Source: Macrostomum lignano (taxonomy: Eukaryota). From it: DNA of 64,000 bases. This document shows positions 3 to 56,096 of the stretch, piece after piece; the first letter of the stretch is position 1; every line of letters starts with the position of its first letter. Made by a program: the position numbers and the translations under genes. The notes beneath the pieces were generated by a model. That model had not been told where the DNA came from, made no database searches, and saw only the letters and a program-made list of their open reading frames with translations. The stretch lies in NCBI GenBank assembly GCA_002269645.1, contig NIVC01000708.1, forward strand, positions 1-64,000, read 5' to 3'.

Positions 3-4765
<4,763 letters not shown>

Positions 4766-5671: not shown

Positions 5672-6852
<1,181 letters not shown>

Positions 6853-33000: not shown

Positions 33001-34586
33001 TCAAAAAGGGGGGAATCCCCCCCCCTATTGGTAATTTTTACAGGCGGAAAATGGTTTGGTATTCCTACTGTTAATGGTGGAAGCCTCACTTACTATCCAA
33101 TGTTTGAAACAGCTTAATTGTAACATTTTGCCTAAAAATTAATGCATTTCCTTTAAATTTAATATATTTGTGATTTCATATTTATATACTTCAGGCCAGG
33201 GAGTTGGCATAGTAGGATCAGTTAATTTGTAAAGACTTGGCACATTTTATAAAGCTCATACAAATGAGCAAGTTTCCATGCCAATCATTGAAGCAACTGC
33301 AAATTTTGATTTAAATACTATTGTGTAAAGAATGCAGTTTTACCATACATATGTTGTAAATTAGCTTTCCAAATTTCAATCCACTCTAGTCATACTTGTT
33401 CTCTTATTTAAAAACTGATCCAGAATGCTTTATTGCTTCTATAAGACTATGAAATCAAGCCTTCAATTCAATGATTTTTTGTCTTTGTCAAAGCTGTGAA
33501 TATCTAAGATTTACTTAGAGATTAAGATGTGTATAAGATATATAAGATATTTTTACTGAATTTTATTCCAATACAGTATCAACTTTTATTCAATGCCCTT
33601 ATTATTAATCTGAATGGAATTTTGCTGGGTATAATGTAACTAGCATCTTATAATCTTGCTCATTTTTCCCTGTCTCAAGGCCGAGGCGGAGGTGCAGGCC
33701 CTCACCCGGCGCATCCGCCTGATTGAGGAGGACCTGGAGCAGACTGAGGGCCGCCTGCAGGAGGCCACGCAGAAGCTGGAGGAGGCCAGCAAGGCAGCTG
33801 ACGAGAGCGAGCGGTGAGCTGATTAGTTAATCAATACTTGCCAGTCGTTATGTCCTTACTACACTACTGAACAGGAATAAGTAGTATTTTTTAGCTTTTC
33901 ATGACTATTTTATATTCGCATGCCCATCGCGTGCCGTGCTTTTCGATTTCAGGCGGATGACAGAATTCAAAGTTCCCGTTGTACTTTTATTTAAATAATT
34001 GATTTCTGCTCTCTATTAGATCCCGCAAAGTGCTGGAGAGTCGCCAGAACGAGGACGAAGCCAGGCTGAGCTCGCTGGACCAGATGGTCAAGGAGGCCAC
34101 GGATGCGGCCAAAGAAGCTGAGAAAAGATACGAAGAGGTACAGAGAGGGCTTGATGGTATCCGTAAGATGCTTTTTATTTAGGCTCCGGATTTTGTGGGC
34201 CTAGTCTGTGGGAGTTGTTTTTGCCAGCAGGAAACACAGCAATTCATCAGTGTTGTTGGTAAAACGCTTAACTTCATGTTGTTTTTATTTTGTAGATGAA
34301 GTCATTCTGATAACCAAATTTCTGTAAACTTGTTCATTTTTTGGAACGTTTATCAACTTGCTAAATTATTTGTGTCATTCGCGTTTGTCCGGTGCTACTA
34401 TTGATCATTTTTTCCTTTAAACATTCATTCGCTTTTATATCCGATATACTCGTATGCTATCGAATATTCAGTATGTTTAGTTAAACATGCTTGATAGATA
34501 AATAGATTGATAGCAATAAACAAGACAGACTGACAAACAGACACTAAGACAGATAGGCAGACAGGCAGACAGACAGACAGATAGGC

Positions 34587-34625
<39 letters not shown>

Positions 34626-34658
34626 TAGGCAGACAGACAGACAGACAGACAGATAGGC

Positions 34659-34691
<33 letters not shown>

Positions 34692-34698
34692 CAAAGAA

Positions 34699-34735
<37 letters not shown>

Positions 34736-34770
34736 CAAAGACAGATAGACAGACAGACAAACAGATAGGC

Positions 34771-34813
<43 letters not shown>

Positions 34814-34826
34814 TAGGCAGACAGGC

Positions 34827-34873
<47 letters not shown>

Positions 34874-34906
34874 TAGGCAGGCAGGCAGACAGACAGACAG
34901 ATAGGC

Positions 34907-34945
<39 letters not shown>

Positions 34946-34978
34946 TAGGCAGACAGACAGACAGACAGACAGATAGGC

Positions 34979-35011
<33 letters not shown>

Positions 35012-35018
35012 CAAAGAA

Positions 35019-35055
<37 letters not shown>

Positions 35056-35090
35056 CAAAGACAGATAGACAGACAGACAAACAGATAGGC

Positions 35091-35129
<39 letters not shown>

Positions 35130-35142
35130 TAGGCAGACAGGC

Positions 35143-35189
<47 letters not shown>

Positions 35190-35202
35190 TAGGCAGACAG
35201 GC

Positions 35203-35243
<41 letters not shown>

Positions 35244-35246
35244 CAA

Positions 35247-35279
<33 letters not shown>

Positions 35280-38200
35280 GGCAGACAGACAGACAGAACA
35301 CACTGACGGAACCGCTGTCGCTGCCGCAGAGGCCGCAAGGTGCTGGAGACCCGCTCCATCGCTGACGAGGAGCGCGTCAATACACTGGAGGAGCAGCTCA
35401 AGGAGGCGAAGTTCATCGCAGAGGACGCGGACCGCAAATATGATGAGGCAGCCAGGAAGCTGGCCATCACCGAGGTGGACCTCGAGCGGGCCGAGTCCCG
35501 CCTGGAGGCGGCTGAGAGGTGCCCTTGGCATGCCCTGCGTGTCCCATTGAAGTGTTTTCAGTTTTTTTGACTGCATTTAAATCTTCGTCCTGTTGTGAAT
35601 GTTTTTGTCCAGAGACCTGTTCCAGGATATTTTGAGTTCTCAAAAACAAATTAGAGAATTTATAATAACTATTTACTAATTGCCCGTCTTGCTTGTATTT
35701 TCATGCTCGATTTCTATTTATGAACTGCAGATTTAAACTGTTATGATCCCAGTGCGAATATAAATCCTAAACTGACACTTGTGATCCCGATTTGAAAGTT
35801 AAAATCCCAACCTGGTGGCTGAAATCCTAATGTGACAACAATTATCCCAACCTGTCAGCTAAAATCCCAACCTGTCAGCTAAAAATCCCAATCTGACAGC
35901 TAAAATCCCAACGTGGCGGCTAAAATCCCAATCTGAAAGCTAAAATCCCAATCTGACAGCTAAAATCCCAACCTGGCGGCTAAAATCCCAATCTGACAGC
36001 TAAAATCCCAATCTGACAGCTAAAATCCCAACCTGGCGGCTAAAATCCCAATCTGACAACTAAAATCCCAGTATGAAGTCAGAAAAGTTTTTTAAAGTTT
36101 TTCGATATGCTTTTCGAGTTTTTTGGCATGAACGTTTTTTAAACAGGAGTCTTGCTTTTCTTTGTCGGGAATTGCTGTGTTTTTTAGAGAGCTAGAAGAT
36201 AGAACTAAGTAGAAGCATGAAGCTGTTCGGGTGCCAAGAACTATAGTGCCAGTGAATTTGAGTTGGTTTAAAAATTGTAATTATTAGGAGTGTAATCCTT
36301 ATTCTAGCGTTATCCTCTAACTCCGGCTTAGATGGGAGTTTTACTTCCCAGTACTGGCACATAAATAGTTTTAAACAGCTGGCAGGGTATATATTTATTA
36401 GTTGTTGCTAACCGCCAACCTGGGGGCCATGTCGTCATCAGGTCAACCGGAAGCTGCTTCTGACCGAAGCCCAGCTGGACAGGGCGGAGCAGAGGGCCGA
36501 GGCCGCTGAGCGCAAAGTCAAGGATCTGTCGGACGAGCTGCACTCTGTCGCTAACAGTCTAAAATCGCTTGAGCAGAGGGATGCCAAGGTTCTTAGTTTA
36601 CCTTTTTGGTTATTTTTAAGCGCCCATCATATTCATTATTCACGTTAACGATTCGATTATTTTATAATTTTATGTTTTTAACGCCATAAAGAATTTATGG
36701 AGGTTTAGTCAGTATTCACTACTCACAAGTAGCTAATTATTGTACAATAGGAAAAGTCTGTGTTTGCACGCTTGCGCATGGCATGGTTCAAGCCAATAAA
36801 TTAATCTGTCTATTCGTATGAACAATTACTATAAAGTTGCAATTGAAATCAACGATAAAGAAACTGTGCACTGAAAATGCAGCAAAATCCTGGAACTGGA
36901 AGAGGAGCTGCGCGTTGTTGGCAGCAACATGAAATCGTTGGAGATCTCAGAGCAGGAGGCGGCCCAGCGCGAGGAGTCTTACGAGGAAACTATCCGAGAT
37001 CTCTCCGAGCGTCTCAAGGCTGTAAGGGCTTAGATTGAATTGGATTTGCAATTAGATTGCAGTATGCCATAGTTGAACTACAATAAAAAGATAAGTCAAT
37101 TAGTTCAAAGCATTTTAAATTAATATTGGAGGAAATTAACGGTGTGTCTAGACTGTAAAATGTGCTGGAGGGGCAGGTGTGAGTACGTAGAAAAGTTTAG
37201 CGGGCTCTGGCTCTTATCTAGATTGACTAGCTAGAACGGGGTGGGTGTGGGGGGTAGGAAGGTTTAGCTAGCTCTGGCTCTTATCTAGATTGACTAGCTA
37301 GAATGGGGTGGGTGTGGGGGGTAGGAAGGTTTAGCTAGCTCTGGCTCTTATCTAGATTGACTAGCTAGAATGGGGTGGGTGTCGGGGGTAGAAAAGTTTA
37401 GCGGGCTCTGGCTCTTATCTAGATTGACTAGCTAGAACGGGGTGGGTGTTGGAGGGGTAGGAAAGTTTAGCGGGCTCTGGCTCTTATCTAGATTGACTAG
37501 CTAGAACGGGGTGGGTGTGGGGGGTAGGAAGGTTTAGCTAGCTCTGGCTCTTATCTAGATTGACTAGCTAGAATGGGGTGGGTGTGGGGGGTAGGAAGGT
37601 TTAGCTAGCTCTGGCTCTTATCTAGATTGACTAGCTAGAATGGGGTGGGTGTCGGGGGTAGAAAAGTTTAGCGGGCTCTGGCTCTTATCTATATTGACTA
37701 GCTAGAATGGGGTGGGTGTCAGGGGGGGTAGAAAAGTTTAGAGGGCTCCTGCTTTTATCTCGGTTGACTAAGCTAGAATGGGGTGGGTGTCGGGGGTAGA
37801 AAAGTTTAGCGGGCTCTGGCTCTTATCTAGATTGACTAGCTAGAACGGGGTGGGTGTTGGAGGGGTAGGAAAGTTTAGCGGGCTCTGGCTCTTATCTAGA
37901 TTGACTAGCTAGAACGGGGTGGGTGTGGGGGGTAGGAAGGTTTAGCTAGCTCTGGCTCTTATCTAGATTGACTAGCTAGAATGGGGTGGGTGTGGGGGGT
38001 AGGAAGGTTTAGCTAGCTCTGGCTCTTATCTAGATTGACTAGCTAGAATGGGGTGGGTGTCGGGGGTAGAAAAGTTTAGCGGGCTCTGGCTCTTATCTAT
38101 ATTGACTAGCTAGAATGGGGTGGGTGTCAGGGGGGGGGTAGAAAAGTTTAGAGGGCTCCTGCTTTTATCTCGGTTGACTAAGCTAGAATGGGGTGGGTGT

Positions 38201-41200
38201 CGGAGGGGTAGGAAAGTTTAGCTGGCTGGCTGAATTTTTTATATTGGCAGGCTAGAGTGAGTGGTTTAGCTAGAGTGGCTCTGGATTGAGGTGGGTGTCG
38301 AACGGGTTAGGTTCTAGATTATAGTTTATGCTACAAGGAGGCGATTTCGCTCAGTAATACGAAACTTATGTCGCATATTTTCATAGCCGCCAAAGCAGTC
38401 GTAAGCAAAACCAGTATTTTAGAAGAAACAGTCTCCAAAGCTTCGTCGTGTCGTTCTTCGTCGACTTGCATCGCATATTGCTGTAATTAACACACCGAGT
38501 GCCGTGCCCTCTTGTATAATTTGCAAAAATCCAAGCATTGCTTCTTTGAAACTTGAAGACCAAAGTTCAGTTCAGTTTGAACTATGCCTGCGTTTTATGC
38601 GTTCACTTAGGGGGGGGGGAGTATTTGAGTAAGAGTAGTTTGAAGCATGGCGTTTTTCATTACTTTATATTTACAAACTTTATGATTTTCATTATCCTTT
38701 TTTTGTAATTGTTAACATATCTTTTAAATATTGCAATGTCTTGTGCATGCCAGTTTGCTGCTCAGACATTCTGGTGACTGATTCCAACTCCACCAACCAA
38801 TCTTCAAACCAACTCCCATCTACTTTTCTCCATCCTCTCTACCCCATCCCTCTTGCCGCATCATTTCTACCTCAGTCCGTCCGCATGCCCTTGATCGCGA
38901 ACAGTCGCCCATTAGTTCAACTAACTGCCTGCCATCTTTGCAGTCTGCATCCAGAGAGGAGTCGTACGAGACTCAGATTAAGAGCCTGACCCGCCGGCTT
39001 GCCGAGGTAAATATTAATTTATATCTCCGTGAAATACTTGTTTTAACTGGGCCGCATGCTTTGTTCTGAGTCCAGATTAGTGCACGAGTATGCTTGCTGT
39101 GACTGTTGCTCCTGTTGCTCCTGCTTGCCCAACAATTTTTTTAACCTAATAACATGTGACGACACGACTGGCTGAAGTTGAGGAAGCAGCGGTGGAGTAG
39201 CGGCCAAATCGAATTCGGTTTTTCAATGGGAGTTTCGCTGGATCGCCTCTTTTATATTTGCTTCTAAAAATGATAGTGTTATTCAATTCACTCTACTAAG
39301 AAGAGTAGTTCTATTCCAATTTAAAGCTTTAGGTTTTTTAGATACAGAGATAAATATTACTTTAGGTAGGCTGTTAAATTGCGTGCATTCTGCCCAGCAG
39401 CTGCCAAACTGCATCGCAAAGAGTCACCCATAGATGGATCAAGAATTGTCCATAGATAGATCAATAATTACCCATAGACGGATCAAGAATTGCCCATAGA
39501 CAGATCTAGAATCACCCATAGACAGATCTAGAATCACCCATAGATAGATCAAGGATTATCCATAGGCAGCTCAAGAATTACCCATAGACAGAATAAGAAT
39601 CACCCATTCTTATTCTGTCTCAAAGGGATAGATTGAGAATCACCGATAGACAGATCAAGAATTATCCATAGATCGCTCAAGAATCACCCTCAGACAGAAT
39701 AAAAATCACCCATAGACAGGGCTACCCCATAGACAGATTGAGAATCACCCATAGACAGGGCTACCCCATAGACAGATTGAAAATCACCCATAGACAGATT
39801 GAGAATCACCCATAGACAGATTGAGAATCACCCATAGGCAGATTGAAAATCACCCATAGACAGATTGAGAATCACCCATAGACAGATTGAGAATCACCCA
39901 TAGACAGATTGAAAATCACCCATAGACAGATTGAGAATCACCCATAGACAGATTGAGAATCACCCATAGGCAGATTGAAAATCACCCATAGACAGATTGA
40001 GAATCACCCATAGGCAGATTGAAAATCACCCATAGACAGATTGAAAATCACCCATAGACAGATTGAGAATCACCCATAGACAGATTGAAAATCACCCATA
40101 GACAGATTGAGAATCACCCATAGGCAGATTGAAAGTCACCCATAGACAGATTGAGAATCACCCATAGACAGATTGAGAATCACCCATAGGCAGATTGAAA
40201 ATCACCCATAGACAGATTGAGAATCACCCATAGGCAGATTGAAAATCACCCATAGGCAGATTGAAAATCACCCATAGACAGATTGAGAATCACCCATAGA
40301 CAGATTGAAAATCACCCATAGACAGATTGAAAATCACCCATAGACAGATTGAGAATCACCCATAGACAGATTGAGAATCACCCATAGGCAGATTGAAAAT
40401 CACCCATAGACAGATTGAGAATCACCCATAGACAGATTGGAAATCACCTATAGACAGATTGAAAATCACCCATAGACAGATTGAGAATCACCCATAGACA
40501 GATTGAAAATCACCCATAGACAGATTGAGAATCACCCATAGGCAGATTGAAAGTCACCCATAGACAGATTGAGAATCACCCATAGACAGATTGAGAATCA
40601 CCCATAGGCAGATTGAAAATCACCCATAGACAGATTGAGAATCACCCATAGGCAGATTGAAAATCACCCATAGACAGATTGAAAATCACCCATAGACAGA
40701 TTGAGAATCACCCATAGACAGATTGAAAATCACCCATAGACAGATTGAGAATCACCCATAGACAGATTGGAAATCACCTATAGACAGCTATTGGGAATTA
40801 CTCACAGATTGAGGATCACCCATAGACAGATCAAGAAGTGCCCATAGACAGCTCACGAATTATCCTTGGACACGAATAAGTAATCTGAACACAAGTTGAA
40901 AACATCCTTTGCTATGCACTTTGGGATGTTGCTAAGGCAAAATACACGCAACTTGAGCAGACAGTAAGTACATTAAATTCTCTGACTAAATCCGGACACA
41001 ATCGTCACCCTCGATCGTGAGCTCAGGCTGAGCAGCGCGCTCAGGAGGCCGAGAGGCAGGTGTCCAAGCTGCAAAGCGAAGTGGACAGGCTGGAGGGTAT
41101 GTTACAGTATCTGTCATTGCTCACTGCGGTGCGGCCTCTCCGCTATCAGCATCGGCCGAGAAACGAACCGGACCTTTTGCCGCGGATGTTCTATTGCTCT

Positions 41201-44494: not shown

Positions 44495-44700
44495 ACTGTC
44501 TTTCAGATTGTTTGACCAGCTGTCAGTCTGCTTGTCCACCTGAGTGTCTTTCTGACTGTTAAACCTGTCAGTCTGCCTGTCCACCGGAGTGTCTTTCTGA
44601 CTGTTAAACCTGTGAGTCTGCCTGTCCACCTGAGTGTCTTTCTGACTGTTAAACCTGTCAGTCTGCCTGTCCACCGGAGTGTCTTTCTGACTGTTTAACT
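44495..44700. repeat. 45-bp minisatellite (TGTCAGTCTGCCTGTCCACC..GTCTTTCTGACTGTTAAACC)
   Basis: About 4 units. Confidence 0.85.
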
Positions 44701-44995: not shown

Positions 44996-47900
44996 ATGTC
45001 CTTCAACGAGAATGTAAGTTTACATTTGTTCCTGTCATTAAGAGTCAGCAAAACGTACAAACAATGCCCATCGTTCCCTGATCTGTAATACAAAAACGGG
45101 AGACATGCAAAATCAGTCAATTAAGATAAGACGAACCATATATACTCGTTTTGCTCTGTTCGCCCAGGCCCGGCCATTCCTGACTCTCCACGTGGGTCAG
45201 GCTGGAGCACAGATCGGCAACGCGATTTGGGAGCTGCTCTGTCTTGAGCACAATGTTCAAAAAAGCGGCCTAGCCAAGCCCGACTGCCCTAGCAACGGTT
45301 TCTATGACGCAATGTTTGTACGCAATCAGAACGGCCATTTCATGCCCAGGTCGATCTTTTTAGATACGGATCCAACGTGTATTGGTAAGCATATGCTTTA
45401 GATTAGCGGCTTCTGTATCTCCTTCATTGCTGAAACTCTAATTTGGAAGCGGCCAATCAGAATCGGAGGGGTAGCTTGCGGAGTGAGGTGGGTGTCAACA
45501 GGGCAGACAGACCAGTTGAAAAGCAGCCAATCAGAATTTGAGTAACGGATTTTGTTGTCTTGAGTAGTCTCAACTGTTTTTCCGCAGACGAGATTCGAGT
45601 CGGGCCCTACAGGGAGTTGTTCAGCACCCGGCAGCTGCTCAGCGACAGCGCGGACTCTGGGTTCAACTACATGCGCGGCCGGCGCGACTTCCGCCGCAAC
45701 CTCCTGCCGGAAGCAGTTGAAAGGTTTCGCTGGCTCTCTGAGAAGTCGGATGTGACGCCGACCGCATTTCTTGTTCACAGCACCGGCGGCGGCACTGGCA
45801 GCGGCCTGTCGGTGTCCTACCTGGAGGAGCTAAGGTCCGAGTTCGATTCCCGTCTGCAGGTACTTGAGCTAAGCGTCAGCTCGGGCAACAGCGGCCTGCA
45901 GAGCACCTGCGAACTTGTCAACTCGATGCTATACTCATACGAGTCCAAGGACTACACTTCGTTGTCCTTCTCCGTCACCAACTCGGCCATGTTCAACTTG
46001 TGCAGGTCCGGCCTCAGCCTGTACGGTGGCGCCACCTTTGCCCATCTGAATCGCATGCTCGCCATGTGCTTCAGCAACCTGACCGTGATGGAGAGATTTC
46101 CAGGCACCATGATGTGCAACATTGCCAACATTTGCAGCAATGTACTGCCGTTTAAGTAAGTACTGCGACGGTCCGTTACTTGACAAATAGGGAATTCAGG
46201 ATGGTCAGGATGGGATGGTCAGGATGATCAGGATGGTCAGGATGGTCAGGATGGTCAGGATGGTCAGGATGGTCAGGATGGTCAGGATGGGATGGTCAGG
46301 ATGATCAGGATGGGATGGTCAGGATGGTCAGGATAGTCAGGATGGGATGGTCAGGATGATCAGGATGGTCAGGATGGGATGGTCAGGATGATCAGGATGG
46401 TCAGGATGGTCAGGATGGTCAGGATGGGATGGTCAGGATGGTCAGGATGGGATGGTCAGGATGATCAGGATGGTCAGGATGGTCAGGATGGTCAGAATGG
46501 GATGGTCAGGATGGTCAGGATGGTCAGGATGGTCAGGATGGGATGGTCAGGATGGTCAGGATGGTCAGGATGGGATGGTCAGGATGGTCAGGATGGGATG
46601 GTCAGGATGGTCAGGATGGTCAGGATGGTCAGGATGGGATGGTCAGGATGGTCAGGATAGTCAGGATGGGATGGTCAGGATGATCAGGATGGTTAGAATG
46701 GTCAGGATGGTCAGGATGGTCAGGATGGGATGGTCAGGATGGTCAGGATGGTCAGGATGGGATGGTCAGGATGGTCAGGATGGTCAGGATGGGATGGTCA
46801 GGATGATCAGGATGGTCAGGATGGTCAGAATGGGATGGTCAGGATGGTCAGGATGATCAGGATGGGATGGTCAGGATGGTCAGGATAGTCAGGATGGGAT
46901 GGTCAGGATGATCAGGATGATCAGGATGGTCAGGATGGTCAGGATGGTCAGGATGTTCAGGATGGGATTGTCAGGATGGTCAGGATGGTCAGGACGGTCA
47001 GGATGGGATGGTCAGGATGATCAGGATGGTCAGGATGGTCAGGATGGTTAGGATGGTCAGGATGGTCAGGATGGTCAGGATGGTCAGGATGGGATGGTCA
47101 GGATGGTCAGGATGGGATGGTCAGGATGATCAGGATGGTCAGGATGGTCAGGATGGTCAGGATGATCAGGATGGTCAGGATGATCAGGATGGTCAGGATG
47201 GTCAGGATGGTCAGGATGGTCAGGATGGGATGGTCAGGATGATCAGGATGGTCAGGATGATCAGGATGGTCAGGATGGTCAGGATGGGATGGTCAGGATG
47301 GTCAGGATGGTCAGGATGGTCAGGATGGAATGGTCAGGATGGTCAGGATGGTCAGGATGGTCAGGATGGTCAGGATGGGATGGTCAAGATGGTCAGGATA
47401 GTCAGGATGGGATGGTCAGGATGATCAGGATGGTCAGGATGGTCAGGATGGTCAGGATGGGATGGTCAGGATGGTCAGGATGGGATGGTCAGGATAGTCA
47501 GGATGGGATGGTCAGGATGGTCAGGATGGTCAGGATGGTCAGGATGGGATGGTCAGGATGATCAGGATGGTCAGGATGGGATGGTCAGGATGATCAGGAT
47601 GGTCAGGATGGTCAGGATGGTCAGGATGGTCAGGATGGGATGGTCAGGATGGTCAGGATGGGATGGTCAGGATGATCAGGATGGTCAGGATGGTCAGGAT
47701 GGTCAGAATGGGATGGTCAGGATGGTCAGGATGGTCAGGATGGTCAGGATGGGATGGTCAGGATGGTCAGGATGGTCAGGATGGGATGGTCAGGATGGTC
47801 AGGATGGGATGGTCAGGATGGGATGGTCAGGATGGTCAGGATGGTCAGGATGGTCAGGATGGGATGGTCAGGATGGTCAGGATAGTCAGGATGGGATGGT

Positions 47901-50381
47901 CAGGATGATCAGGATGGTTAGAATGGTCAGGATGGTCAGGATGGTCAGGATGGGATGGTCAGGATGGTCAGGATGGTCAGGATGGGATGGTCAGGATGGT
48001 CAGGATGGTCAGGATGGGATGGTCAGGATGATCAGGATGGTCAGGATGGTCAGAATGGGATGGTCAGGATGGTCAGGATGATCAGGATGGGATGGTCAGG
48101 ATGGTCAGGATAGTCAGGATGGGATGGTCAGGATGATCAGGATGATCAGGATGGTCAGGATGGTCAGGATGGTCAGGATGGTCAGGATGGGATTGTCAGG
48201 ATGGTCAGGATGGTCAGGACGGTCAGGATGGGATGGTCAGGATGATCAGGATGGTCAGGATGGTCAGGATGGTTAGGATGGTCAGGATGGTCAGGATGGT
48301 CAGGATGGTCAGGATGGGATGGTCAGGATGATCAGGATGGTCAGGATGGTCAGGATGGTCAGGATGATCAGGATGGTCAGGATGATCAGGATGGTCAGGA
48401 TGGTCAGGATGGTCAGGATGGTCAGGATGGGATGGTCAGGATGATCAGGATGGTCAGGATGATCAGGATGGTCAGGATGGTCAGGATGGTCAGGATGGTC
48501 AGGATGGGATGGTCTGGATGGTCAGGATGGTCAGGATGGTCAGGATGGGATGGTCTGGATGGTCAGGAATGTCAGGACAGTCATCAGTGCCAGGATCAAT
48601 GGTATTCCGAGGCTTCCCAACCAATCCGCAGGCAGCTGAAGCACCCCATCGTGGCCTGCGCGCCGTTTGCTGCAGCCTCGGCTGTCGGCAAGGAGCGCTC
48701 GAGCGCCATCGGCATCACTTCGGCGGTGATGGAGCCTGATGGTCAGCTAGCGGATGTGGACCTGCGCCAGGGCAAGCACATGGCCGGTGCGCTCATCTAC
48801 CGAGGCGCGGCCAAGACAGCCGGCATCGAGCAGGCGCTGCTGTCGCTGCGCGAGCGCGGTCGAGTTCAGTTCGTTGACTGGGCGCCGTCCAGCTTCAAGA
48901 CCGGCCTGTCCGAGCTGCCGCCGCTAGCCGTACCGGACAGCGGCATCGCCGGGCTGCCCCTGTCTGTGACGCTGGTCAGCAATCACTCGGCCGTGGCGTC
49001 ACTTTTCCGCGGCCAATCGACCGCAGTCAGGAAGCTAGTCGAGGCCGGCAGCTGCTTCCTGCGCAGCTACGAGACGAGCGCCGCCAATGGTTCCGAGGCC
49101 GGTGGCGGGTTGGAAGACAGCGGCTCTTCGCAATCGGCTGGTCACAACGTCGGCGGCCGCGGTGGAAACATCGTCGGCCTGCTCCAGGAGGCCTCCGACC
49201 ATTTGGAGGGCCTGGCGCATGTGTACAGCAGCGAGCTTCCGCCGACCCCCACTGGCCAGAAGGCGAACAGCGAAGACTCCGGCGGTCCCAAGCGGATCGT
49301 GGCGTCACCAATGTCGAGGGCGGCAGCCGCCAAGCCGCGCCGGGCCTCGCTGGGTCGGGAGGCGCTGTTCCCCATCGGGCCAAGTCGATCCGGCCGAGTG
49401 CAAGCGGACGAGGAGTCAGCAACCCCGAGCAAAGTCGCCTCTGTGCAGCAACAGTCGACAGGAAGCGGCACCGACGAACGATTCGGACCATCGCAGATGC
49501 AGGAACTGGACTCGCCGGGCAAAGTCGCCTCTGTGCAGCAACAGTCAACGGGAAGCGGCACCGACGAACGATTCGGACCATCGCAGATGCAGGAACTGGA
49601 CTCGCCGGGCGAAGAGGCAGTGGGCTCTTCAGAAATGAAGCCAGAAAGCCAATACTCGCCGGTTGCTATGCAGCCGTCGCAGGAGTACGGTGCGACAGCG
49701 TTCAGCGAAAAAGAGACACTGACAATTGAGAGATCCGATGTGTCCGACAATATGCCGGAGGGAGCGGCGTCGCCGCAAGATAGCGCGGTCACGCAAGGCC
49801 AGCCGGTGACGCTCACGCACACTCAGTCATTCTCCACGCCGACCGCTGACAGCGAAGGAGCCACTCCGCTGGCCAGCGCTCCGCGGCAGGATTATAGCGA
49901 ATCAATATCGAGGCGGCAGCAGAAGCGAGGCGGCGGCAGTGGTGGCTGCTGCCGAAAGCGCAATAAACAGCCGTCGAAACGGTCCGGCGCCCATCAACGG
50001 TCGCGGTCGCAGAATCACGCCAACTCGTGGGGTGCCAAATCCAGCAGGTTCTTCCTGTACAGCGGCAGCAGTAGCAGCCAAGACGACATGCTGGTTGGCA
50101 CCAGGGACGGCTATTCGTATCTGACCTATCATTCGAGTGCCACTCACAGTTTCAGCTTCCTGCCCGCCAACGTGGTCAACTCTCAGGTCGAGAGCGACGC
50201 GAAATCCGAGCTTGACGAGGCCCTCGACTACGCGTCTGTTGGGTCGAGTGGCGCAGCTACGGATAGCGCAACTGATCTGGACGAGATCATACGCGACTGC
50301 GTGCCCGGACCAATGCCTGTTTTGACCAGCGTCAAGAGAATGGTGCAAAAGTACAATGAAATGTTTGCGAAAGAAGGCTGA
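44996..50381 (+). CDS. Highly divergent alpha-tubulin-like protein with a long C-terminal extension (about 850 aa)
   Basis: Exons 44996-45013 (MSFNEN), 45168-45384 (LHVGQAGAQIGNAIWELLCLEH...PRSIFLDTDPTCI), 45588-46155 (DEIRVGPYRELF, NYMRG, HSTGGGTGSG, HLNR), 48632-50381 (GKHMAGALIYRG, QFVDWAPSSFKTG, SNHSAVA, then the tail). Alpha-type motifs; phases consistent; no internal stops. The true start may lie further upstream, as the frame is open back to an AG at 44931-44932. Confidence 0.85.
46195..48575. repeat. 9-bp (GGATGGTCA) plus 5-bp (GGATG) satellite filling the tubulin intron; ~1.2-kb higher-order duplication
   Basis: Rare variants recur 1225 bp apart (GGTTAGAATG 46691/47916; GGATTGTC about 46967/48192; GACGG 46993/48218). 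Confidence 0.95.
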
Positions 50382-53300
50382 TTTAAAAAAATAACATGAT
50401 GCTTTGCCATCTCTCGTGATAGAGTTAAAATCCGCTGTATTTTAAAAATTTAAGTTTAAAATAAATTGATTTAATTTTCGCCGCTTTTAGCACTGTGTTG
50501 GCCACTTGCTTAGCCGCCCAGTTGCAGCCGCGGAGCAATTAATTTATTTAAAATCCACATAAAAACTATAGCCCCAATATAATTAATTTAAACGCACAAT
50601 GCATGTGCCTGAGGACTTAAGTCAGCCCTGTATATGAAAAAATCGTCCGCAAAAACGAGGAAGGATTCGTCCGCAATTTATGTATTGTAGATCTATATAG
50701 ATCTATAGTTCATATATTAAGGAGCTAGATCTTTATCAGAGAAAATTCTAAAAGATATTCTCTCAAATTTCGATGACTACGTCTACATATGGAGTCTGCA
50801 CACCGAATAGGATATTTTCATGTACTCACTCGGACAAAGATAAATCCAAACCGAGATTTTCTGTCGTAACTTTAAAATTTGAATAATAAAAATATAGTAC
50901 TTATTATTTACCGATTTGTTGTTTTCCAGAAAATATTTATGAGTAGAATTTACTATTTATTTTTCATGTTTTGCTGATATTGCAATATACATTTCGTTTT
51001 TTGTTAACATTTAAGCAAGTTTACAGTAAAAATTTAACACTGTGAAAGATTTCATTTTTTTGCAATGACTTGAGCAGCTCAGCTTAGTCGTTAAGGTTGT
51101 AGCTTGTGGATAAGGTCCATCCCAGTGCCCTTATTACTGTCAGACCTGTGCTAAGTAAAATTAAGTTTGCATAAATACGTTTATTATATTATATTATATT
51201 ATATTATATAATTATATTATACTATAAATACATAGGTCATTCATAGGCCTAGGTCTAGTCATCACCCATCAGTCATTTTTGCATTTTTGTAAGAATAGGC
51301 CTACTATATTGGTATACTTAAATCATTTAAGTATAAATCTTATGAGAAAGCCTACTAGTGTATTAGCTTAAATGTAAGTCCTATATCTTATTTTAATATT
51401 CTAGATTTATGTCTTCTATTTTCTACTTTTTCACCATACAGTATGTTATAGGTATGAAAATCCATTTAAATACAGCTATTTCTCACTGCTATTCCTGCTA
51501 ATTTATACCAAACATCATTCTAAGCCTATACTATACAACTAAAAAATAAATCTTTGTTTAATACCATAGCATAATCCAGATCATGCTAAGTACACACAAA
51601 TGAACATTAAACAAAGATTGAATGCACACCCATTCTGGAAGCTACACCAGTGTTGTGACTCAATGTCCTTTTTTAAATTGCATAAAGGACCTTTTTGGCT
51701 AATAATTTAGTTGATTTTTGTGCTTTTTTAATAATATTATTTATTAAAATATAGCGGAAAATTGATACATGCAAAGATTTGCTTAAGTAAATACTTTATT
51801 ACTAGCTTAAAAAACCTAGAAAGATATGAAAGGTTTCATATCAATATATACCAAGTATAGCTCTAGGCCCTAATATAGACACTAAATAAAAGGTCATACA
51901 TGCGCAACCCCCCTAATTTACACTGGCTATGCAACTTACTTTTTGACCAAAAATGTGACTTACCTATGATAGAAACCCTAGAGCAACATTAACGCAATTT
52001 TGGGTAAATGGCAAGAATAACTGTGACTGTCTTATAAGGGCTAAATGCCTCATCATCTAATTAGTACTATATCTGTATTCTTTGGGGTAGGCATTTTTGC
52101 GACTTACCCATGGTCCACCACAATTTACGGTGGCCAGATTGGCCAGGTTAGCCAGCAGTTACGCATGTATGTAAAATGTATTATAAAGTTGAAAATAGTT
52201 TCAAAAAAGGAAATAAAGACTTAATGAATTTAATTTAACCCTATACTTTCTATTTTGCAATTTAGCCTTATACTTTTCAATTAGCTGACTCCCTTTGTCT
52301 ACCATGCTCTTCCCCACAGATAATCCCAACTGTTAATTTATTATTTATTAGTTAATTGTCAACTTTGACAACATGATTCCTACATTTTTGCACCAATCTG
52401 AAATAAAAAACTTTGAAACTTTGAATTGTTAGGAATTGTTTAGAATTTCTAGAGATGGATAAGTGCTTAAAAAACAAAGTTGTTAATTTTACTGTTTTAA
52501 TAGCTTGGGGATGTCCAAACATGCTAAAATCAGCTTCTCAAGTGGAGAAAATGTAAAAGCCTTGAAAAAATAGTTTAAAATTGATTCAAGAAGAATGCCT
52601 ATTTATAATATATATTAAGATATTATATTATGAAAACCAGTCTAAATCAAAAGTTGTAAGTTGTAAAGTTTAAAAAAGTAGGCCTAAAGTTAAAAAGTAG
52701 CAGAATAGGGTCAAATAAAGCTTTTTTTCAAATTTATTTGTTATGACTTCTTAGAAGCTTATGTTATATATCCTTATATAAATAAATAAAAATAAAAAGA
52801 TATTTGCTATTTTCATCTATAAGAATTCAAGTTTGAAATTAGGTTTTTTAGGTCTTAAAAAATCCATAGAATCACCAAATCTCCTAGGCCCATTCTAGTT
52901 AATTATAGAATTTATAATTTTATATCAAAGACATGGGTTAGGGTTAGGGTTGAGTTTAGCAAATTATATTAAATGAAAGCAAAAGTTTAGTTTTATATAC
53001 AAATATAGTAGCTAAAATTTTATGAAATTTTAAGATTTGAAATACTTTGGTAGGTTTATTGTATATTACAAATTGAATTGTTCTATAAAAATCTTAAAGT
53101 TAGCAATATTTTTATTAAATATTCTATATTCATTGTAATAATTTAGAAATATGAGTGTAGTTTGAGATTTAAAAAATATATATTTTATTTATTGTAAATA
53201 TGTAAATATGTAAGTTTAAAATACCAGCAAAATACTTTAAATGACTATTCTAATGTCACACTACATTCCAACTAAAGTACAATGTTAAATTTCCACACTT

Positions 53301-53500
53301 TGTATTATTTACCATATTCTAATTAGGATAGTTCATTTTTGTTTTAATGTGCAGAAGCTTCTAGGTAGGCCTATTTAAAATGTATGAATACATAGTATCT
53401 GCCACCAAAATCTTCAAATCTCATGAGACAATTGAAAAATGAAATATTTGGCGGGTGCAAAAAGCTTGCTACTTTGATTTCCAATTCATGCCCTCCCAAA

Positions 53501-56096
53501 ATGTCGGCAGCAGACGATGACGCATTCAACAGGCTGGCTAGTGACATTGCTAGACAGGTGGACAGCATTAAGAGCAATGCCAATCAGATCAAATCTCTGG
53601 CCTCATCTATTGGCACTGAGCGGGACTCGTCAGACAGGCGGCAGCAGCTGCACTCGCTGACCCACACCACTAGGGCGCTGTGCCAGGCTGCCGCTGATCA
53701 GCTGCGCGACGGCCTGGCGCCAATGTGCGTCGGGCTGGCTGGCGGCGCCAGGCGCGCGCAGAAGGACCGCCTGTTGGACAAGCTGGCTAAGGCGGCAGGC
53801 GACTTTCAGGTATGCCTAGTGGGGTGGGTGGAATGGCCGGGGGCGGTTGGTAGGTTTTCTCGTAGAGTCGGTGAGTAGAGTGTCTGGTAGAGTCGGTGAG
53901 TAGAGTGGCTGGTAGAGTTCGGTGAGTAGAGTGTCTGGTAGTGTCCGGTGAGTAGAGTGTCTGGTAGAGTCAGTGAGTAGAGTGTCTGATAGAGTCTGTG
54001 AGTAGTTTCTGGTAGTGTCCGGTGAGTAGAGTGTCTGGTAGAGTCAGTGAGTAGAGTGTCTGGTAGAGTCTGTGAGTAGTTTCTGGTAGTGTCCGGTGAG
54101 TCGAGTGTCTGATAGTGTCCGGTGAGTAGAGTGTCTGGTAGTGTCTGGTAGTGTCCGGTGAGTAGATTGTCTGGTAGAGTCTGTGAGTAGTTTCTGGTAG
54201 TGTCCGGTGAGTAGAGTGTCTGGTAGTGTCCGGTGAGTAGAGTGTCTGGTAGTGTCCGGTGAGTAGAGTGTCTGGTAGTGTCTGGTAGTGTCCGGTGAGT
54301 AGAGTGTCTGGTAGTGTCCGGTGAGTAGAGTGTCTGGTAGTGTCCGGTGAGTAGAGTGTCTGGTAGTGTCCGGTGAGTAGAGTGTCTGGTAGTGTCCGGT
54401 GAGTAGAGTGTCTGGTAGTGTCCGGTGAGTAGAGTGTCTGGTAGTGTCTGGTAGTGTCCGGTGAGTAGAGTGTCTGGTAGTGTCCGGTGAGTAGAGTGTC
54501 TGGTAGTGTCCGGTGAGTAGAGTGTCTGGTAGTGTCCGGTGAGTAGAGTGTCTGGTAGTGTCCGGTGAGTAGAGTGTCTGGTAGTGGCCGGTGAGTAGAG
54601 TGTCTGGTAGTGTCCGGTGAGTAGAGTGTCTGGTAGTGTCCGGTGAGTAGAGTGTCTGGTAGTGTCCGGTGAGTAGAGTGTCTGGTAGTGTCCGGTGAGT
54701 AGAGTGTCTGGTAGTGGCCGGTGAGTAGAGTGTCTGGTAGTGTCCGGTGAGTAGTGTCTGGTAGTGTCCGGTGAGTAGAGTGTCTGGTAGTGTCCGGTGA
54801 GTAGTGTCTGGTAGTGTCCGGTGAGTAGAGTGTCTGGTAGAGTAGAGTGTCTGGTAGAGACTTAGAGTTCGGTGAGTGGGATAGCTGGTAGAGTCAGTGA
54901 GTAGGCATGTCGTTGAGCGTTCAGCCTCTCCCGGCCCCATCCAGGAGGCGCAGCGGCTTGTCCAGTCGCGCGAACGCGAGCAAGTCGCCCAGCAAAAGCG
55001 CGCAGCCAGCGGTGTGGAGGCGGCCTTCAACGGCGATGCGCAGCCGCCCCCGCCCAGCGGTGCCGAAGACAACTCCAACCCGTTCACGCTGGAGAACGCG
55101 CAGATGCAGGCGACCGCGGATCTGCAAGACGATTTGCAGGCCGCCGAGGAGCGGGAGAGCCAGCTGCGGCAGCTGGAGCAGGACATTGTGGGTAAGCTTG
55201 CGGGTCTGGGTCGTCAGGCTGTTAATTCCAACTATTCTAATGCGGTTATTCGGGTTTAATATCCACACTCCTTCCGTCATCTCAATTTCTCTATCCATCA
55301 CAGTAATACATTTACAGCCTACTGACTTCAGTAGTGTGTTAGTCAGCCTACTGACTTCAGTAGTGTGTTAGTCAGCCTACTGACTTCAGTAGTGTGTTAG
55401 TCAGCCTACTGACTTCAGTAGTGTGTTAGTCAGCCTACTGACTTCAGTAGTGTGTTAGTCAGCCTACTGACTTCAGTAGTGTGTTAGTCAGCCTACTGAC
55501 TTCAGCACAATTGACCACTATTCTTAATTCACACCACTCCCCTATTCACCCCCTTTCACACCTCGATTCTCCTATTCGCCCCATTACAGAATTCCCTCCA
55601 CTCCACCTTTCACACCACTACCCTATTCGGTCCACTACCTTTTCACTCTACTACCCTGTTCACTCCACTACCCTATTCACTTCACTACCCTATCCACCCC
55701 CATTCACACCTCGATTCTCATATTCGCCCACTCCACTATTAATCCACTCCACCATTCACCCACTTCACCATTAACCTTACTCCAACATTCACCCACTCTC
55801 TATTCACTCACTTTCCCCTTTGCTCCACTACCCTGTTCCCCCCAACCGCAGGCATCAACGAGATGTTCAAAGACCTGGCTCAGATGGTGCACGAGCAGGG
55901 CGACATGATCGATTCGATCGAAGACCACGTCGGGCAGGCGGTCATGCAGGTGGAGGAGGGCAGCAAGAACCTGAAGCAGGCGGTCACCTATAAGAAGTCT
56001 GCTAGGCGCAAGAAGATCATCATTGCGCTGGTGGTGATTGCGGCGCTCGCAATCCTGGCCGTGATCATCTATTTTGCCGTGCCCAAGCCTAACTAG
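53501..56096 (+). CDS. STX7/STX12: Syntaxin-7/12-like endosomal Qa-SNARE (266 aa)
   Basis: Exons 53501-53809 (Habc-like; IGTERDSSDRRQQLH; QKDRL...DFQ), 54945-55191 (EERESQLRQLEQDIV), 55852-56096 (GINEMFKDLAQMVHEQGDMIDSIE SNARE motif with layer-0 Gln, then KKSARRKK and a C-terminal transmembrane helix). Confidence 0.9.
53870..54900. repeat. 26-bp minisatellite (GTGAGTAGAGTGTCTGGTAGTGTCCG)
   Basis: Fills syntaxin intron 1. Confidence 0.95.
55315..55505. repeat. 29-bp palindromic minisatellite (CAGCCTACTGACTTCAGTAGTGTGTTAGT)
   Basis: About 6 identical units; each has CTACTGA-CT-TCAGTAG dyad symmetry. Confidence 0.95.

What the first reader, a model, noticed from the sequence alone, without database searches (positions are those of the whole stretch)
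45168..46155. Alpha-type tubulin predicted to bind GTP but lacking the residues that trigger hydrolysis in the neighbouring beta-tubulin
Seen: the ORF is intact and keeps GQAG, GGGTGSG (45785-45805) and the E183, N206 and N228 equivalents. The T7 loop/H8 reads GTMMCNIANICSNVLPF (46103-46153) against canonical GALNVDLTEFQTNLVPY, i.e. N249M, D251N and E254N, and the T3 loop has N101F. Established: alpha-tubulin E254, helped by D251, completes the beta-tubulin GTPase site in the lattice, and E254 substitutions give hydrolysis-deficient, hyperstable microtubules. Inference: this could be a natural non-catalytic alpha-tubulin acting as a stable cap or seed or building a non-dynamic structure (for example flatworm sperm microtubule arrays or the 9+'1' core), or a tubulin-fold protein that no longer polymerises. 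This is my best candidate for an undescribed system.
Basis: partly seen in the sequence, partly recalled or inferred. Interest (0 to 1): 0.82.

Follow-up and report, generated by a model that had tools for sequence, protein, structure and literature searches.

The report
Divergent non-catalytic alpha-like tubulin, long tail
A flatworm (Macrostomum lignano) gene encodes a strongly diverged alpha-tubulin copy that has lost the residues that normally trigger GTP hydrolysis and carries a 380-residue disordered tail; selection is preserving it, but its altered surfaces suggest it is not an ordinary microtubule building block.

Summary
However, 45168-46155 is not one ORF. It is exons 2 and 3 of a four-exon gene (44996-50381, + strand) that encodes an 850-aa protein: a tubulin body plus a 380-aa disordered tail. 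The gene is Macrostomum lignano Mlig018576, annotated only as a hypothetical protein.

It is alpha-derived: 256 bits to alpha, 156 to beta and 120 to gamma, with alpha-specific motifs, and Foldseek TM 0.94 to alpha chains. It has no acidic residue anywhere in T7/H8 (N249M, D251N, E254N). It is not a pseudogene: three genomic copies keep the whole frame open, with dN/dS about 0.2.

A sister paralogue, Mlig033756 (47% identical, dN/dS about 0.08), also lacks D251/E254 and also has a long tail. No closer relative exists among 1.84 billion representative proteins.

Only 42% of alpha-invariant positions survive. The nucleotide pocket and plus face are conserved between the two paralogues. The minus face, the lateral loops and the H11/H12 outer surface are not.

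The idea of a cap or seed inside a canonical lattice is poorly supported. A specialised role outside the ordinary lattice is more likely. Expression site and partners remain unknown.

The parts
44996..45013 (+). Exon 1 (MSFNEN), followed by a GTAAGT donor
   Evidence: The junction MSFNEN|ARPF is reproduced in the transcript-derived proteins P0001 and P0273.
45168..45384 (+). Exon 2: S1 to H2, including the T1 loop GQAG (45195-45206) and a shortened H1-S2 loop
   Evidence: It ends at alpha codon ~76 (DPTCI|DEIRVG), and the paralogue has an intron at the same position.
45385..45587 (+). Intron 2 (203 bp, GT..AG).
   Evidence: The reading frame from exon 2 stops at 45399-45401. In the homeologue L001 this intron is 353 bp.
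45588..46155 (+). Exon 3: T3 (N101F) through T7/H8. Includes T4 GGGTGSG (45785-45805) and T7/H8 GTMMCNIANICSNVLPF (46103-46153), with N249M, D251N and E254N.
46156..48631 (+). Intron 3 (phase 2, GTAAGT...CAG), almost entirely a 9-bp minisatellite (TCAGGATGG)n at 46196-48577
   Evidence: Its length differs between genomic copies: 2476, 1554 and 1444 bp.
48632..49238 (+). Exon 4, first part: M-loop, Tubulin_C domain (FVDWAPSSFK, alpha-type S9-S10 insertion), diverged H11, an insertion of ~25 aa in the H11-H12 loop, and H12 (protein aa 268-470)
   Evidence: In the AF2 model, built on database copy P0001 whose numbering runs 42 residues ahead of the window protein, the insertion (P0001 residues 465-487, window aa 423-445) is disordered and H12 is predicted at P0001 residues 490-510 (window aa 448-468).
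49239..50381 (+). Exon 4, second part: a 380-aa C-terminal extension rich in S, A, G, Q and P (aa 471-850), plus the TGA stop. It contains a 90-bp x2 coding repeat (49425-49614), a basic patch at aa 694-740 (49908-50048) and two predicted terminal helices at aa 812-849 (50262-50378).
   Evidence: The frame is open in all three genomic copies, the only indel is an in-frame 9 bp, and tail dN/dS is 0.205, p=5e-5.
50460..50465 (+). AATAAA, a candidate poly(A) signal 79 nt after the stop
   Evidence: Read directly from the sequence. Not otherwise tested.

Best explanation
This is Mlig018576, a functional, lineage-restricted paralogue derived from alpha-tubulin in Macrostomum lignano. It is 850 aa: a complete tubulin fold plus a 380-aa intrinsically disordered C-terminal extension that replaces the acidic E-hook.

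Shown:
- It is alpha-derived.
- The T1, T4, T6 and H7 nucleotide-binding elements are kept.
- The T7/H8 residues that an alpha subunit inserts into the neighbouring beta E-site (D251, E254, also N249) are gone, and no acidic residue replaces them.
- Both the body and the tail are under purifying selection in three genomic copies.
- A sister paralogue (Mlig033756) shares the loss and the long-tail architecture.
- Between the two paralogues the nucleotide/plus face is conserved, but the minus face (T7, H8, H10), the lateral loops and the H11/H12 outer surface are not.

Inferred:
- The protein still binds a guanine nucleotide as a structural cofactor, as the alpha N-site does.
- It engages a partner through its plus face, either a beta-tubulin or its own sister paralogue.
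- It cannot stimulate GTP hydrolysis in any neighbour.
- It is not a regular subunit of dynamic microtubule lattices, because it lacks conserved lateral, minus-end and motor/MAP surfaces.

Most likely it is a specialised non-catalytic tubulin-fold subunit. It would end or decorate a stable cytoskeletal structure, or build one, and the long disordered tail with its basic patch and terminal helices would supply the new interactions. Tissue and partners are unknown.
For: Identity and gene model: confirmed by P0001 and P0273.

Fold: Pfam Tubulin 5e-29 and Tubulin_C 2.5e-22. AF2 body pLDDT is mostly above 90. Foldseek best hits are alpha chains, TM 0.94, E 6e-44.

Alpha origin: the best 60 PDB hits are all alpha, at 262 bits. 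All named hits are alpha-tubulins. phmmer gives alpha 255.7, beta 155.6 and gamma 120.1 bits. The NJ tree has 100% bootstrap for the alpha-like clade against beta and gamma. The FVDWAPSSFK motif and the alpha-type S9-S10 insertion are present.

Catalytic loss. E254N abolishes hydrolysis experimentally (PMC8764682).

Selection:
- Window versus L001: whole gene omega 0.195 (32.5 synonymous, 20.5 nonsynonymous, p=2e-8), body 0.18, tail 0.205.
- The full frame is open in three copies.
- The paralogue body has omega 0.08-0.09, p about 1e-7.

Transcription: the Mlig_3_7 gene models are built from RNA-seq and transcripts (PMC5730564).

Lineage restriction: in an exhaustive phmmer search of 1.84e9 representatives, only P0002 (410 bits) exceeds ordinary alphas (about 260 bits).

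Surface pattern:
- 89 of 211 alpha-invariant positions are kept.
- Identity between the paralogues is 0.60 on the plus face and nucleotide loops, against 0.34 on the minus face (p=0.008), 0.36 on the lateral loops (p=0.004) and 0.07 on H11/H12 (p=6e-9).

Tail: disordered except for two C-terminal helices. It has no E-hook or terminal Y and carries a basic patch.
Against: - No expression, localisation or interaction data were found for either gene.
- Nucleotide binding is predicted, not shown. Nine of 25 N-site contact positions differ (E71D, A99S, A100G, N101F, P173S, V177G, T179Q, Y224F, I231L), and the T5 loop is completely replaced.
- The face and surface sets were defined from textbook secondary-structure ranges, not from computed contacts, and the comparison rests on only two sequences.
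- Part of the plus-face conservation may simply reflect the nucleotide pocket.
- Fast-evolving interfaces could still fit a co-evolved partner or lattice.
- The deposited gene models end the protein early through a frame-shift in the 90-bp repeat. Translation of the full tail therefore rests on ORF retention and dN/dS, plus one independent annotation (P0275).
Confidence: 0.6

Rival explanations
1. One reading: a natural hydrolysis-dead alpha subunit. It pairs with ordinary beta-tubulin and is incorporated into otherwise canonical microtubule lattices. There it locks the beta subunit below it in the GTP state, producing hyperstable microtubules, caps or seeds, for example the cortical microtubules of sperm.
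For: - E254N and E254A human tubulins still assemble, do not hydrolyse GTP and grow without catastrophe (PMC8764682).
- The protein is alpha-derived, with the alpha-type S9-S10 insertion and FVDW motif.
- Plus-face and nucleotide elements are the best-kept surfaces.
- Purifying selection shows that it does something.
Against: - Lattice incorporation needs lateral contacts (M-loop, H1-S2, H2-S3, H3) and minus-face contacts (T7, H8, H10) that fit canonical neighbours. These regions are only 7-25% identical to alpha and are not conserved between the two paralogues.
- T5 keeps 0 of 5 alpha-invariant positions and the H11-H12 loop 2 of 13, with a 25-aa insertion. Both lie on the intradimer face.
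- H11/H12, the motor/MAP surface, is unrecognisable, and the E-hook is replaced by 380 disordered residues that would crowd a lattice surface.
Confidence: 0.2
2. A private pair: Mlig018576 and Mlig033756 form a heterodimer or polymer with each other. This would be an alpha-derived analogue of the alpha/beta or BtubA/B pairs, building a non-dynamic filament without GTP turnover that is independent of canonical microtubules.
For: - The two are sister paralogues (100% bootstrap). Both are retained in three copies under purifying selection.
- Both lack catalytic T7 residues, and both have long tails.
- Their plus faces are conserved while their minus faces differ from each other, as expected if the two play non-equivalent roles in a polar pair.
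Against: There is no direct evidence of interaction or co-expression. The two genes are unlinked. With only two sequences, co-evolution cannot be tested. The multimer prediction that would test this was not available here.
Confidence: 0.12
3. A decaying or neutral relic: a duplicated alpha-tubulin drifting towards pseudogene status, so the lost catalytic residues are simply decay.
For: There is extreme divergence from alpha (about 33% identity, 58% of invariant positions lost). It sits in a repeat-rich genomic setting. The deposited models are truncated by a frame-shift.
Against: - An 850-853-codon frame is open in three genomic copies, with canonical splice sites.
- Synonymous changes are in clear excess: omega 0.195, p=2e-8.
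- The sister paralogue has omega about 0.08.
- The gene models are transcript-derived.
- The nucleotide-binding loops are selectively retained.
Confidence: 0.03

Closest known systems
Canonical alpha-tubulin (e.g. TUBA1B, yeast Tub1; PDB 4ffb_A, 3j8x_A)
   Same: It has the same fold (TM 0.94) and the same two Pfam domains. It shares GQAG, the GGGTGSG signature, D69, D98, E183, N206, N228, the FVDW-P--FK motif and the alpha-type S9-S10 loop insertion. From memory only, its intron positions (one just after a tiny first exon, one at codon ~76) also resemble those of alpha-tubulin genes.
   Different: - Only about 33% identical; 58% of alpha-invariant positions are changed.
- D251, E254 and N249 are lost, and N101 is F.
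- The T5 loop is replaced; H8, H10, H11 and H12 are unrecognisable.
- There is a 25-aa insertion in the H11-H12 loop.
- It has no MREC N-terminus, no K40, no acidic tail and no terminal tyrosine.
- It carries a 380-aa disordered extension instead.
Engineered hydrolysis-deficient alpha-tubulin mutants E254A and E254N (LaFrance et al. 2022, PMC8764682; PMC11893814)
   Same: The substitution at the catalytic position is identical (E254N). The predicted consequence is the same: no activation of GTP hydrolysis in a neighbouring subunit.
   Different: The mutants are otherwise wild-type and assemble into normal lattices. The window protein has changed nearly every polymer interface, so its assembly behaviour cannot be extrapolated from them.
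Mlig033756 (P0002 / A0A1I8J262), the sister paralogue in M. lignano
   Same: It is 47% identical. It shares many derived residues (E71D, T179Q, V182C, E207S, Y210F, L242E and others), also lacks D251/E254, also has a long low-complexity tail of about 320 aa, shares the intron at codon ~76 and is also under purifying selection.
   Different: Its T4 reads ACGGTGSG. Its tail is acidic and Q-rich, with no detectable similarity to the window protein's tail (blastp E>5). T7/H8, H10, H11 and H12 differ between the two, and it lacks the intron after LPFK.
E-hook-less and highly divergent alpha- or beta-like tubulins of ciliates and other protists; mammalian TUBAL3-type E-hook-less alphas (Findeisen et al. 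2014, PMC4202323)
   Same: These are lineage-specific, fast-evolving tubulin paralogues that lose canonical motifs or tails. Some have been proposed to act as structural rather than dynamic building blocks. Several representatives sampled here also lack D251 and/or E254 (P0164, P0213, P0240).
   Different: There is no orthology: the grouping in the tree is on long branches. Most of the sampled divergent alpha-likes keep an acidic residue at 254 (22 of 26). None sampled here has a comparable C-terminal extension of several hundred residues. The window protein is from an animal.
Gamma-tubulin, and beta-tubulin at position 254
   Same: Both are naturally non-catalytic at position 254 (beta has K, gamma has G). 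For both, the plus face is what matters for binding the next subunit. This resembles the plus-face-conserved, minus-face-free pattern seen here.
   Different: The window protein is not a member of either family: 120 bits to gamma and 156 to beta, against 256 to alpha. Both keep N249 and D251, which are lost here.

Membership tests
Eukaryotic tubulin superfamily | Tubulin/FtsZ GTPase domain followed by the Tubulin C-terminal domain | tested here: met
   PF00091 5.1e-29 (aa 11-217) and PF03953 2.5e-22 (aa 271-394), both above the gathering cut-offs. AF2 body pLDDT is mostly above 90.
Eukaryotic tubulin superfamily | Tubulin signature motif [SAG]GGTG[SA]G in loop T4 | tested here: met
   GGGTGSG at 45785-45805.
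Alpha-tubulin class | Closest similarity to alpha rather than to beta, gamma or other classes | tested here: met
   The best 60 PDB hits are all alpha, and all named hits are alpha. Scores are 255.7 (alpha), 155.6 (beta) and 120.1 (gamma) bits, with 100% bootstrap for the alpha-like clade. Delta, epsilon and zeta were not placed in the tree. They are excluded only indirectly, because none appears among the best hits.
Alpha-tubulin class | Alpha-specific S9-S10 loop insertion and FVDWCPTGFK-type motif | tested here: met
   FVDWAPSSFKTG and PPLAVPDSGIAGLPLS align without gaps to alpha 351-375.
Alpha-tubulin class | Catalytic T7/H8 residues D251 and E254 (with N249) that complete the beta E-site GTPase | tested here: not met
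   N249M, D251N and E254N. There is no D or E between R243 and K263 equivalents. These positions are 98-100% conserved in 42 diverse alphas.
Alpha-tubulin class | Full set of N-site GTP contact residues | tested here: inconclusive
   16 of 25 listed contact positions are identical. Nine are changed, three of them conservatively (E71D, Y224F, I231L). N101F and the T5 changes are non-conservative. The contact list is from memory of PDB entry 1JFF, not computed here.
Alpha-tubulin class | Acidic C-terminal tail (E-hook) with a terminal tyrosine; MREC N-terminus; K40 | tested here: not met
   The tail is 380 aa, pI 5.4, S/A/G/Q/P-rich, and ends ...MFAKEG. The N-terminus is MSFNENARPF, and the K40 equivalent is C. 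E-hook-less alphas do exist elsewhere (PMC4202323), so this is a typical feature rather than a strictly defining one.
Alpha-tubulin class | Forms a heterodimer with beta-tubulin and assembles into microtubules | not testable with these tools
   No multimer prediction or biochemistry was available. Indirectly, the lattice surfaces are poorly conserved.
Hydrolysis-dead alpha that is otherwise a normal lattice subunit (E254A/N-type) | Lateral, minus-face and outer surfaces remain alpha-like, so that only catalysis is affected | tested here: not met
   Identity to the alpha consensus is 0.25 on the minus face, 0.25 on the lateral loops and 0.20 on H11/H12. 89 of 211 alpha-invariant positions are kept.
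Processed or decaying pseudogene | Disrupted frame, or dN/dS near 1 | tested here: not met
   The frame is open in three copies, with introns and canonical splice sites. Omega is 0.195, p=2e-8.

The most novel reading that the evidence does not exclude
Macrostomum has evolved a private tubulin system from alpha-tubulin alone. Two sister alpha-like proteins (Mlig018576 and Mlig033756) have both lost the GTPase-activating T7/H8 residues and both carry long disordered tails. They pair through their conserved nucleotide faces and build a GTP-bound, non-hydrolysing and therefore non-dynamic filament or cap that is distinct from canonical microtubules. This would be an animal counterpart of an alpha/beta-like pair arising de novo within a single tubulin class.
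Probability: 0.1. Interest if true: 0.85.

Novelty: new variant of a known kind. Interest (0 to 1): 0.5.

Why it matters
Alpha-tubulin E254 is almost universally conserved, and everything known about removing it comes from engineered mutants. This is a naturally E254N/D251N alpha-derived protein in an animal. It is kept by selection in three gene copies, and a sister paralogue shares the loss.

It shows that the tubulin fold can be retained and selected for after the GTPase-activating function and the canonical lattice and MAP surfaces are given up. It therefore offers a natural case of what a non-catalytic tubulin subunit does in vivo.

M. lignano has RNAi, in situ hybridisation and transgenesis, so localisation and loss-of-function tests are practical. 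The relevance to the GTP-cap question is limited, because the protein is too diverged to behave like a simple hydrolysis-dead alpha. The two genes are currently annotated only as hypothetical or tubulin-domain proteins, and their deposited models are truncated.

Tried and rejected
1. Expression data. I searched full texts and the held supplements of five M. lignano transcriptome papers for Mlig018576 and Mlig033756. There were no occurrences, so tissue specificity is unknown.

2. Spliced protein as input. I used database copy P0001 instead.

3. Segmental duplication. A phosphodiesterase gene lies next to the paralogue. A tblastx of those flanks against the window gave only simple-repeat matches. 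An ORF at 20021-20554 that I had guessed to be PDE-like has no Pfam hit. The idea is rejected.

4. Tail homology. The full-length search found nothing that matched through the tail. Pfam finds only the two tubulin domains. A blastp of one paralogue tail against the other gave E>5.

5. Exact reconstruction of the paralogue's annotated CDS from GT..AG junctions failed. The cause is probably small alignment gaps in the deposited models. I used in-frame genomic segments instead; these include a few intron-edge codons.

6. The first tree script timed out. I redid it with my own distance code. The placement of the pair among protist divergent alpha-likes is on long branches and is not interpreted.

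7. I searched the literature for naturally E254-less alpha-tubulins and for ciliate alpha-like tubulins. Nothing useful came back.

8. The tail in the first AF2 model is meaningless, because P0001's tail is frame-shifted. Only the body of that model is used.
Full report
**1. What is in the sequence**

The window is eukaryotic and very rich in minisatellites (57 TRF rows). The closest database protein identifies the organism as Macrostomum lignano.

The interval 45168-46155 is not one ORF. The frame starting upstream of 45168 stops at 45399-45401, and a second frame runs from 45560 to 46159. With canonical GT..AG junctions the gene has four exons:
- Exon 1, 44996-45013 (MSFNEN).
- Exon 2, 45168-45384.
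- Exon 3, 45588-46155.
- Exon 4, 48632-50381, ending in a TGA stop.

Intron 3 (46156-48631) is almost entirely a 9-bp minisatellite (46196-48577). The spliced CDS is 2553 nt and encodes 850 aa.

All three junctions are reproduced in the deposited proteins BOX15_Mlig018576g1 (P0001, 98% identical) and g4 (P0273, identical up to aa ~536). Those gene models come from RNA-seq and transcript assemblies (PMC5730564), which is indirect evidence of transcription.

**2. Fold and class**

- Pfam finds Tubulin (5.1e-29) and Tubulin_C (2.5e-22).
- The best 60 PDB sequence matches are all alpha-tubulins (E about 1e-76, 262 bits).
- Local phmmer gives 255.7 bits to a vertebrate alpha, 155.6 to TUBB2B and 120.1 to TUBG1.
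- An AF2 model of the 98%-identical copy has pLDDT above 90 over most of the body. Its best Foldseek matches are alpha chains (TM 0.94, rmsd 2.2-2.9 Å, E 6e-44).
- Alpha-specific features are present: FVDWAPSSFKTG and the S9-S10 loop insertion.
- In an NJ tree (43 sequences, 440 columns, 200 bootstraps), the protein and its paralogue group together at 100%. They sit inside an alpha-like clade separated from beta and gamma at 100%, on a very long stem.

Delta, epsilon and zeta were not in the tree. They are excluded only indirectly, because none appears among the best hits.

**3. The catalytic loop**

Both the HMMER alignments and a MAFFT alignment with 42 diverse alphas give the following changes:
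- N249M, V250C, D251N, E254N, F255I, Q256C and T257S.
- These positions are 91-100% conserved in alphas.

There is no acidic residue anywhere between the conserved R243 and the K that follows LPF, so the result does not depend on the alignment register. Beta has K and gamma has G at 254, but both keep N249 and D251. E254N has been engineered in human alpha-tubulin: such microtubules do not hydrolyse GTP and grow without catastrophes (PMC8764682).

**4. Nucleotide site**

- Kept: G10, Q11, A12, Q15, I16, D69, D98, S140, G143-G146, V171, E183, N206 and N228.
- Changed: E71D, A99S, A100G, N101F, P173S, V177G, T179Q, Y224F and I231L.

That is 16 of 25 positions. The contact list is from my memory of PDB entry 1JFF. 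Nucleotide binding is plausible but unproven, and the T3 and T5 changes could alter gamma-phosphate or ribose contacts.

**5. Not a pseudogene**

Two further genomic copies exist (L001 and L002, assembly GCA_002269645.1). Both keep the same exon structure and an open 853-codon frame, and the only indel is an in-frame 9 bp.

Nei-Gojobori dN/dS for the window copy against L001:

| Region | omega | Support |
|---|---|---|
| Whole gene | 0.195 | 32.5 synonymous, 20.5 nonsynonymous; p=2e-8 |
| Tubulin body | 0.18 | p=1e-4 |
| Tail | 0.205 | p=5e-5 |

dS is about 0.055. Introns and flanks differ by 4-11% plus indels.

The deposited models g1 and g4 end early because of a frame-shift at the 90-bp coding repeat. 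The genomic frame, the dN/dS of the tail and an independent annotation (P0275, which carries the tail through to ...KYNEMFAKEG) all indicate that the long form is the real product. Long-read cDNA should confirm this.

**6. Relatives**

An exhaustive phmmer search of 1.84 billion representatives found only one protein closer than ordinary alphas. It is P0002 (Mlig033756, 410 bits, 45-47% identity), against about 260 bits for ordinary alphas. The two higher-scoring others are multi-stretch, fused tubulins. The word-index search agrees.

Mlig033756 also exists in three genomic copies (L003-L005). Its body has omega 0.08-0.09 (p about 1e-7) and its tail 0.19-0.46. It has G at both 251 and 254, reads ACGGTGSG in T4, and carries a tail of about 320 aa that is acidic and Q-rich. 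It shares the intron at alpha codon ~76.

The two proteins share many derived residues at alpha-invariant positions (E71D, T179Q, V182C, E207S, Y210F, L242E and others). The loss of catalysis therefore most likely predates their duplication, and both lineages have been kept since. The family appears restricted to the Macrostomum lineage, as far as databases reach.

**7. Which surfaces are constrained**

Of 211 positions that are at least 90% invariant in 42 diverse alphas, the window protein keeps 89 (42%) and the paralogue 84 (40%).

- Best kept in the window protein: T1/H1 (0.78), T2 (0.71), H10-S9/S9 (0.70), T4 (0.58).
- Worst kept: T5 0/5, H8 1/7, S5 1/7, H11 1/8, H11-H12 loop 2/13, H12 4/16.

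Identity between the two paralogues, by surface:

| Surface | Identity | p versus plus face |
|---|---|---|
| Nucleotide loops / plus face | 0.60 | n/a |
| Minus face (T7, H8, H10, H10-S9 loop) | 0.34 | 0.008 |
| Lateral elements (H1-S2, H2-S3, H3, M-loop) | 0.36 | 0.004 |
| Outer H11/H12 surface | 0.07 | 6e-9 |

So the pocket and plus face are under clade-specific constraint. The surfaces that a regular lattice subunit needs are neither alpha-like nor shared within the clade.

There are caveats. The region boundaries are textbook ranges rather than computed contacts, and only two sequences are compared.

**8. Tail**

Residues 471-850 are rich in S, A, G, Q and P, with pI 5.4. They contain:
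- a 30-aa tandem repeat (49425-49614);
- a basic patch at aa 694-740, net charge about +13;
- no E-hook and no terminal tyrosine.

AF2 on P0275 predicts disorder (pLDDT below 35) except for two C-terminal helices at moderate confidence, corresponding to window aa 812-824 and 830-849. The tail has no detectable homologue. The N-terminus lacks MREC, and the K40 equivalent is C.

**9. Interpretation**

Shown: this is an alpha-derived, transcribed, selectively maintained tubulin-fold protein that cannot supply the catalytic residues to a neighbour.

Inferred: it binds nucleotide structurally and uses its plus face for a partner. It does not behave as a standard lattice subunit, and its tail provides new interactions.

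It is disfavoured by the state of the lateral, minus-face and outer surfaces. The 9+'1' suggestion does not apply: from my own knowledge, not tested here, Macrostomum sperm are aflagellate and macrostomorphs lie outside Trepaxonemata. A private pairing of the two paralogues is the most novel reading that the evidence does not exclude.

**10. Novelty**

[quoted passage not shown] Among 26 sampled divergent alpha-like representatives, 22 keep E or D at 254, and three have lost it (L, Q or K). One near-canonical Caenorhabditis alpha has E254S.

The combination found here is uncharacterised:
- it is from an animal;
- both D251 and E254 are lost;
- two paralogues are each under selection;
- it carries a tail of several hundred residues.

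I found no literature on either gene. I rate it a new variant of a known kind and moderately interesting.

Noticed in passing
window 46196-48577 (intron 3): A 2.4-kb minisatellite of about 289 copies of TCAGGATGG fills the intron. The intron length differs between the three genomic copies (2476, 1554 and 1444 bp), so the array is unstable and also risks assembly or annotation errors.
   Followed up: partly
window 49425-49614; proteins P0001 and P0273: A 90-bp x2 tandem repeat lies inside the coding tail, encoding the 30-aa unit GKVASVQQQSTGSGTDERFGPSQMQELDSP. The deposited models Mlig018576g1 and g4 shift frame here, skipping about 10 nt, and end at ...RQWALQK. The genome keeps the long frame open in all copies, so the deposited proteins are probably truncated artefacts.
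   Followed up: partly
whole window (for example 2191-3775, 5672-6852, 21065-22707, 34523-35297, 39419-40862): The density of minisatellites and microsatellites is extraordinary: 57 TRF rows with score of at least 200 in 64 kb. Most long 'ORFs' in the window are repeat translations rather than genes.
   Followed up: no
window 53423-55300: The downstream neighbour is a syntaxin-like gene (Pfam Syntaxin_2, 4.6e-12), apparently interrupted by a 26-bp minisatellite at 53858-54840. The same neighbour follows the tubulin gene in homeologue L001, and L001 is collinear with window 33.9-41.8 kb at 87-95% identity.
   Followed up: partly
window 44520-44699: Four copies of a 45-bp repeat lie about 300 bp upstream of the start codon, within the putative promoter or 5' region of the tubulin-like gene.
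   Followed up: no
protein P0017 (Caenorhabditis brenneri CAEBREN_28751): This otherwise near-canonical 449-aa alpha-tubulin reads GALNADLHSITVNLVPYP, that is E254S, and also N101D. It may be another natural alpha-tubulin without the catalytic glutamate, in an animal.
   Followed up: no
loci L003-L005 (Mlig033756 copies): In all three copies, a PDEase_I phosphodiesterase gene lies 2-2.5 kb downstream on the opposite strand. No counterpart was found in the window, so there is no sign that the two tubulin-like genes arose by a segmental duplication that included neighbours.
   Followed up: yes
window 28001-33000 and 50400-53400: Two AT-rich stretches (GC 0.32-0.36) contrast with about 0.45-0.6 elsewhere. 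The exon 4 region is the most GC-rich part of the window (0.615).
   Followed up: no
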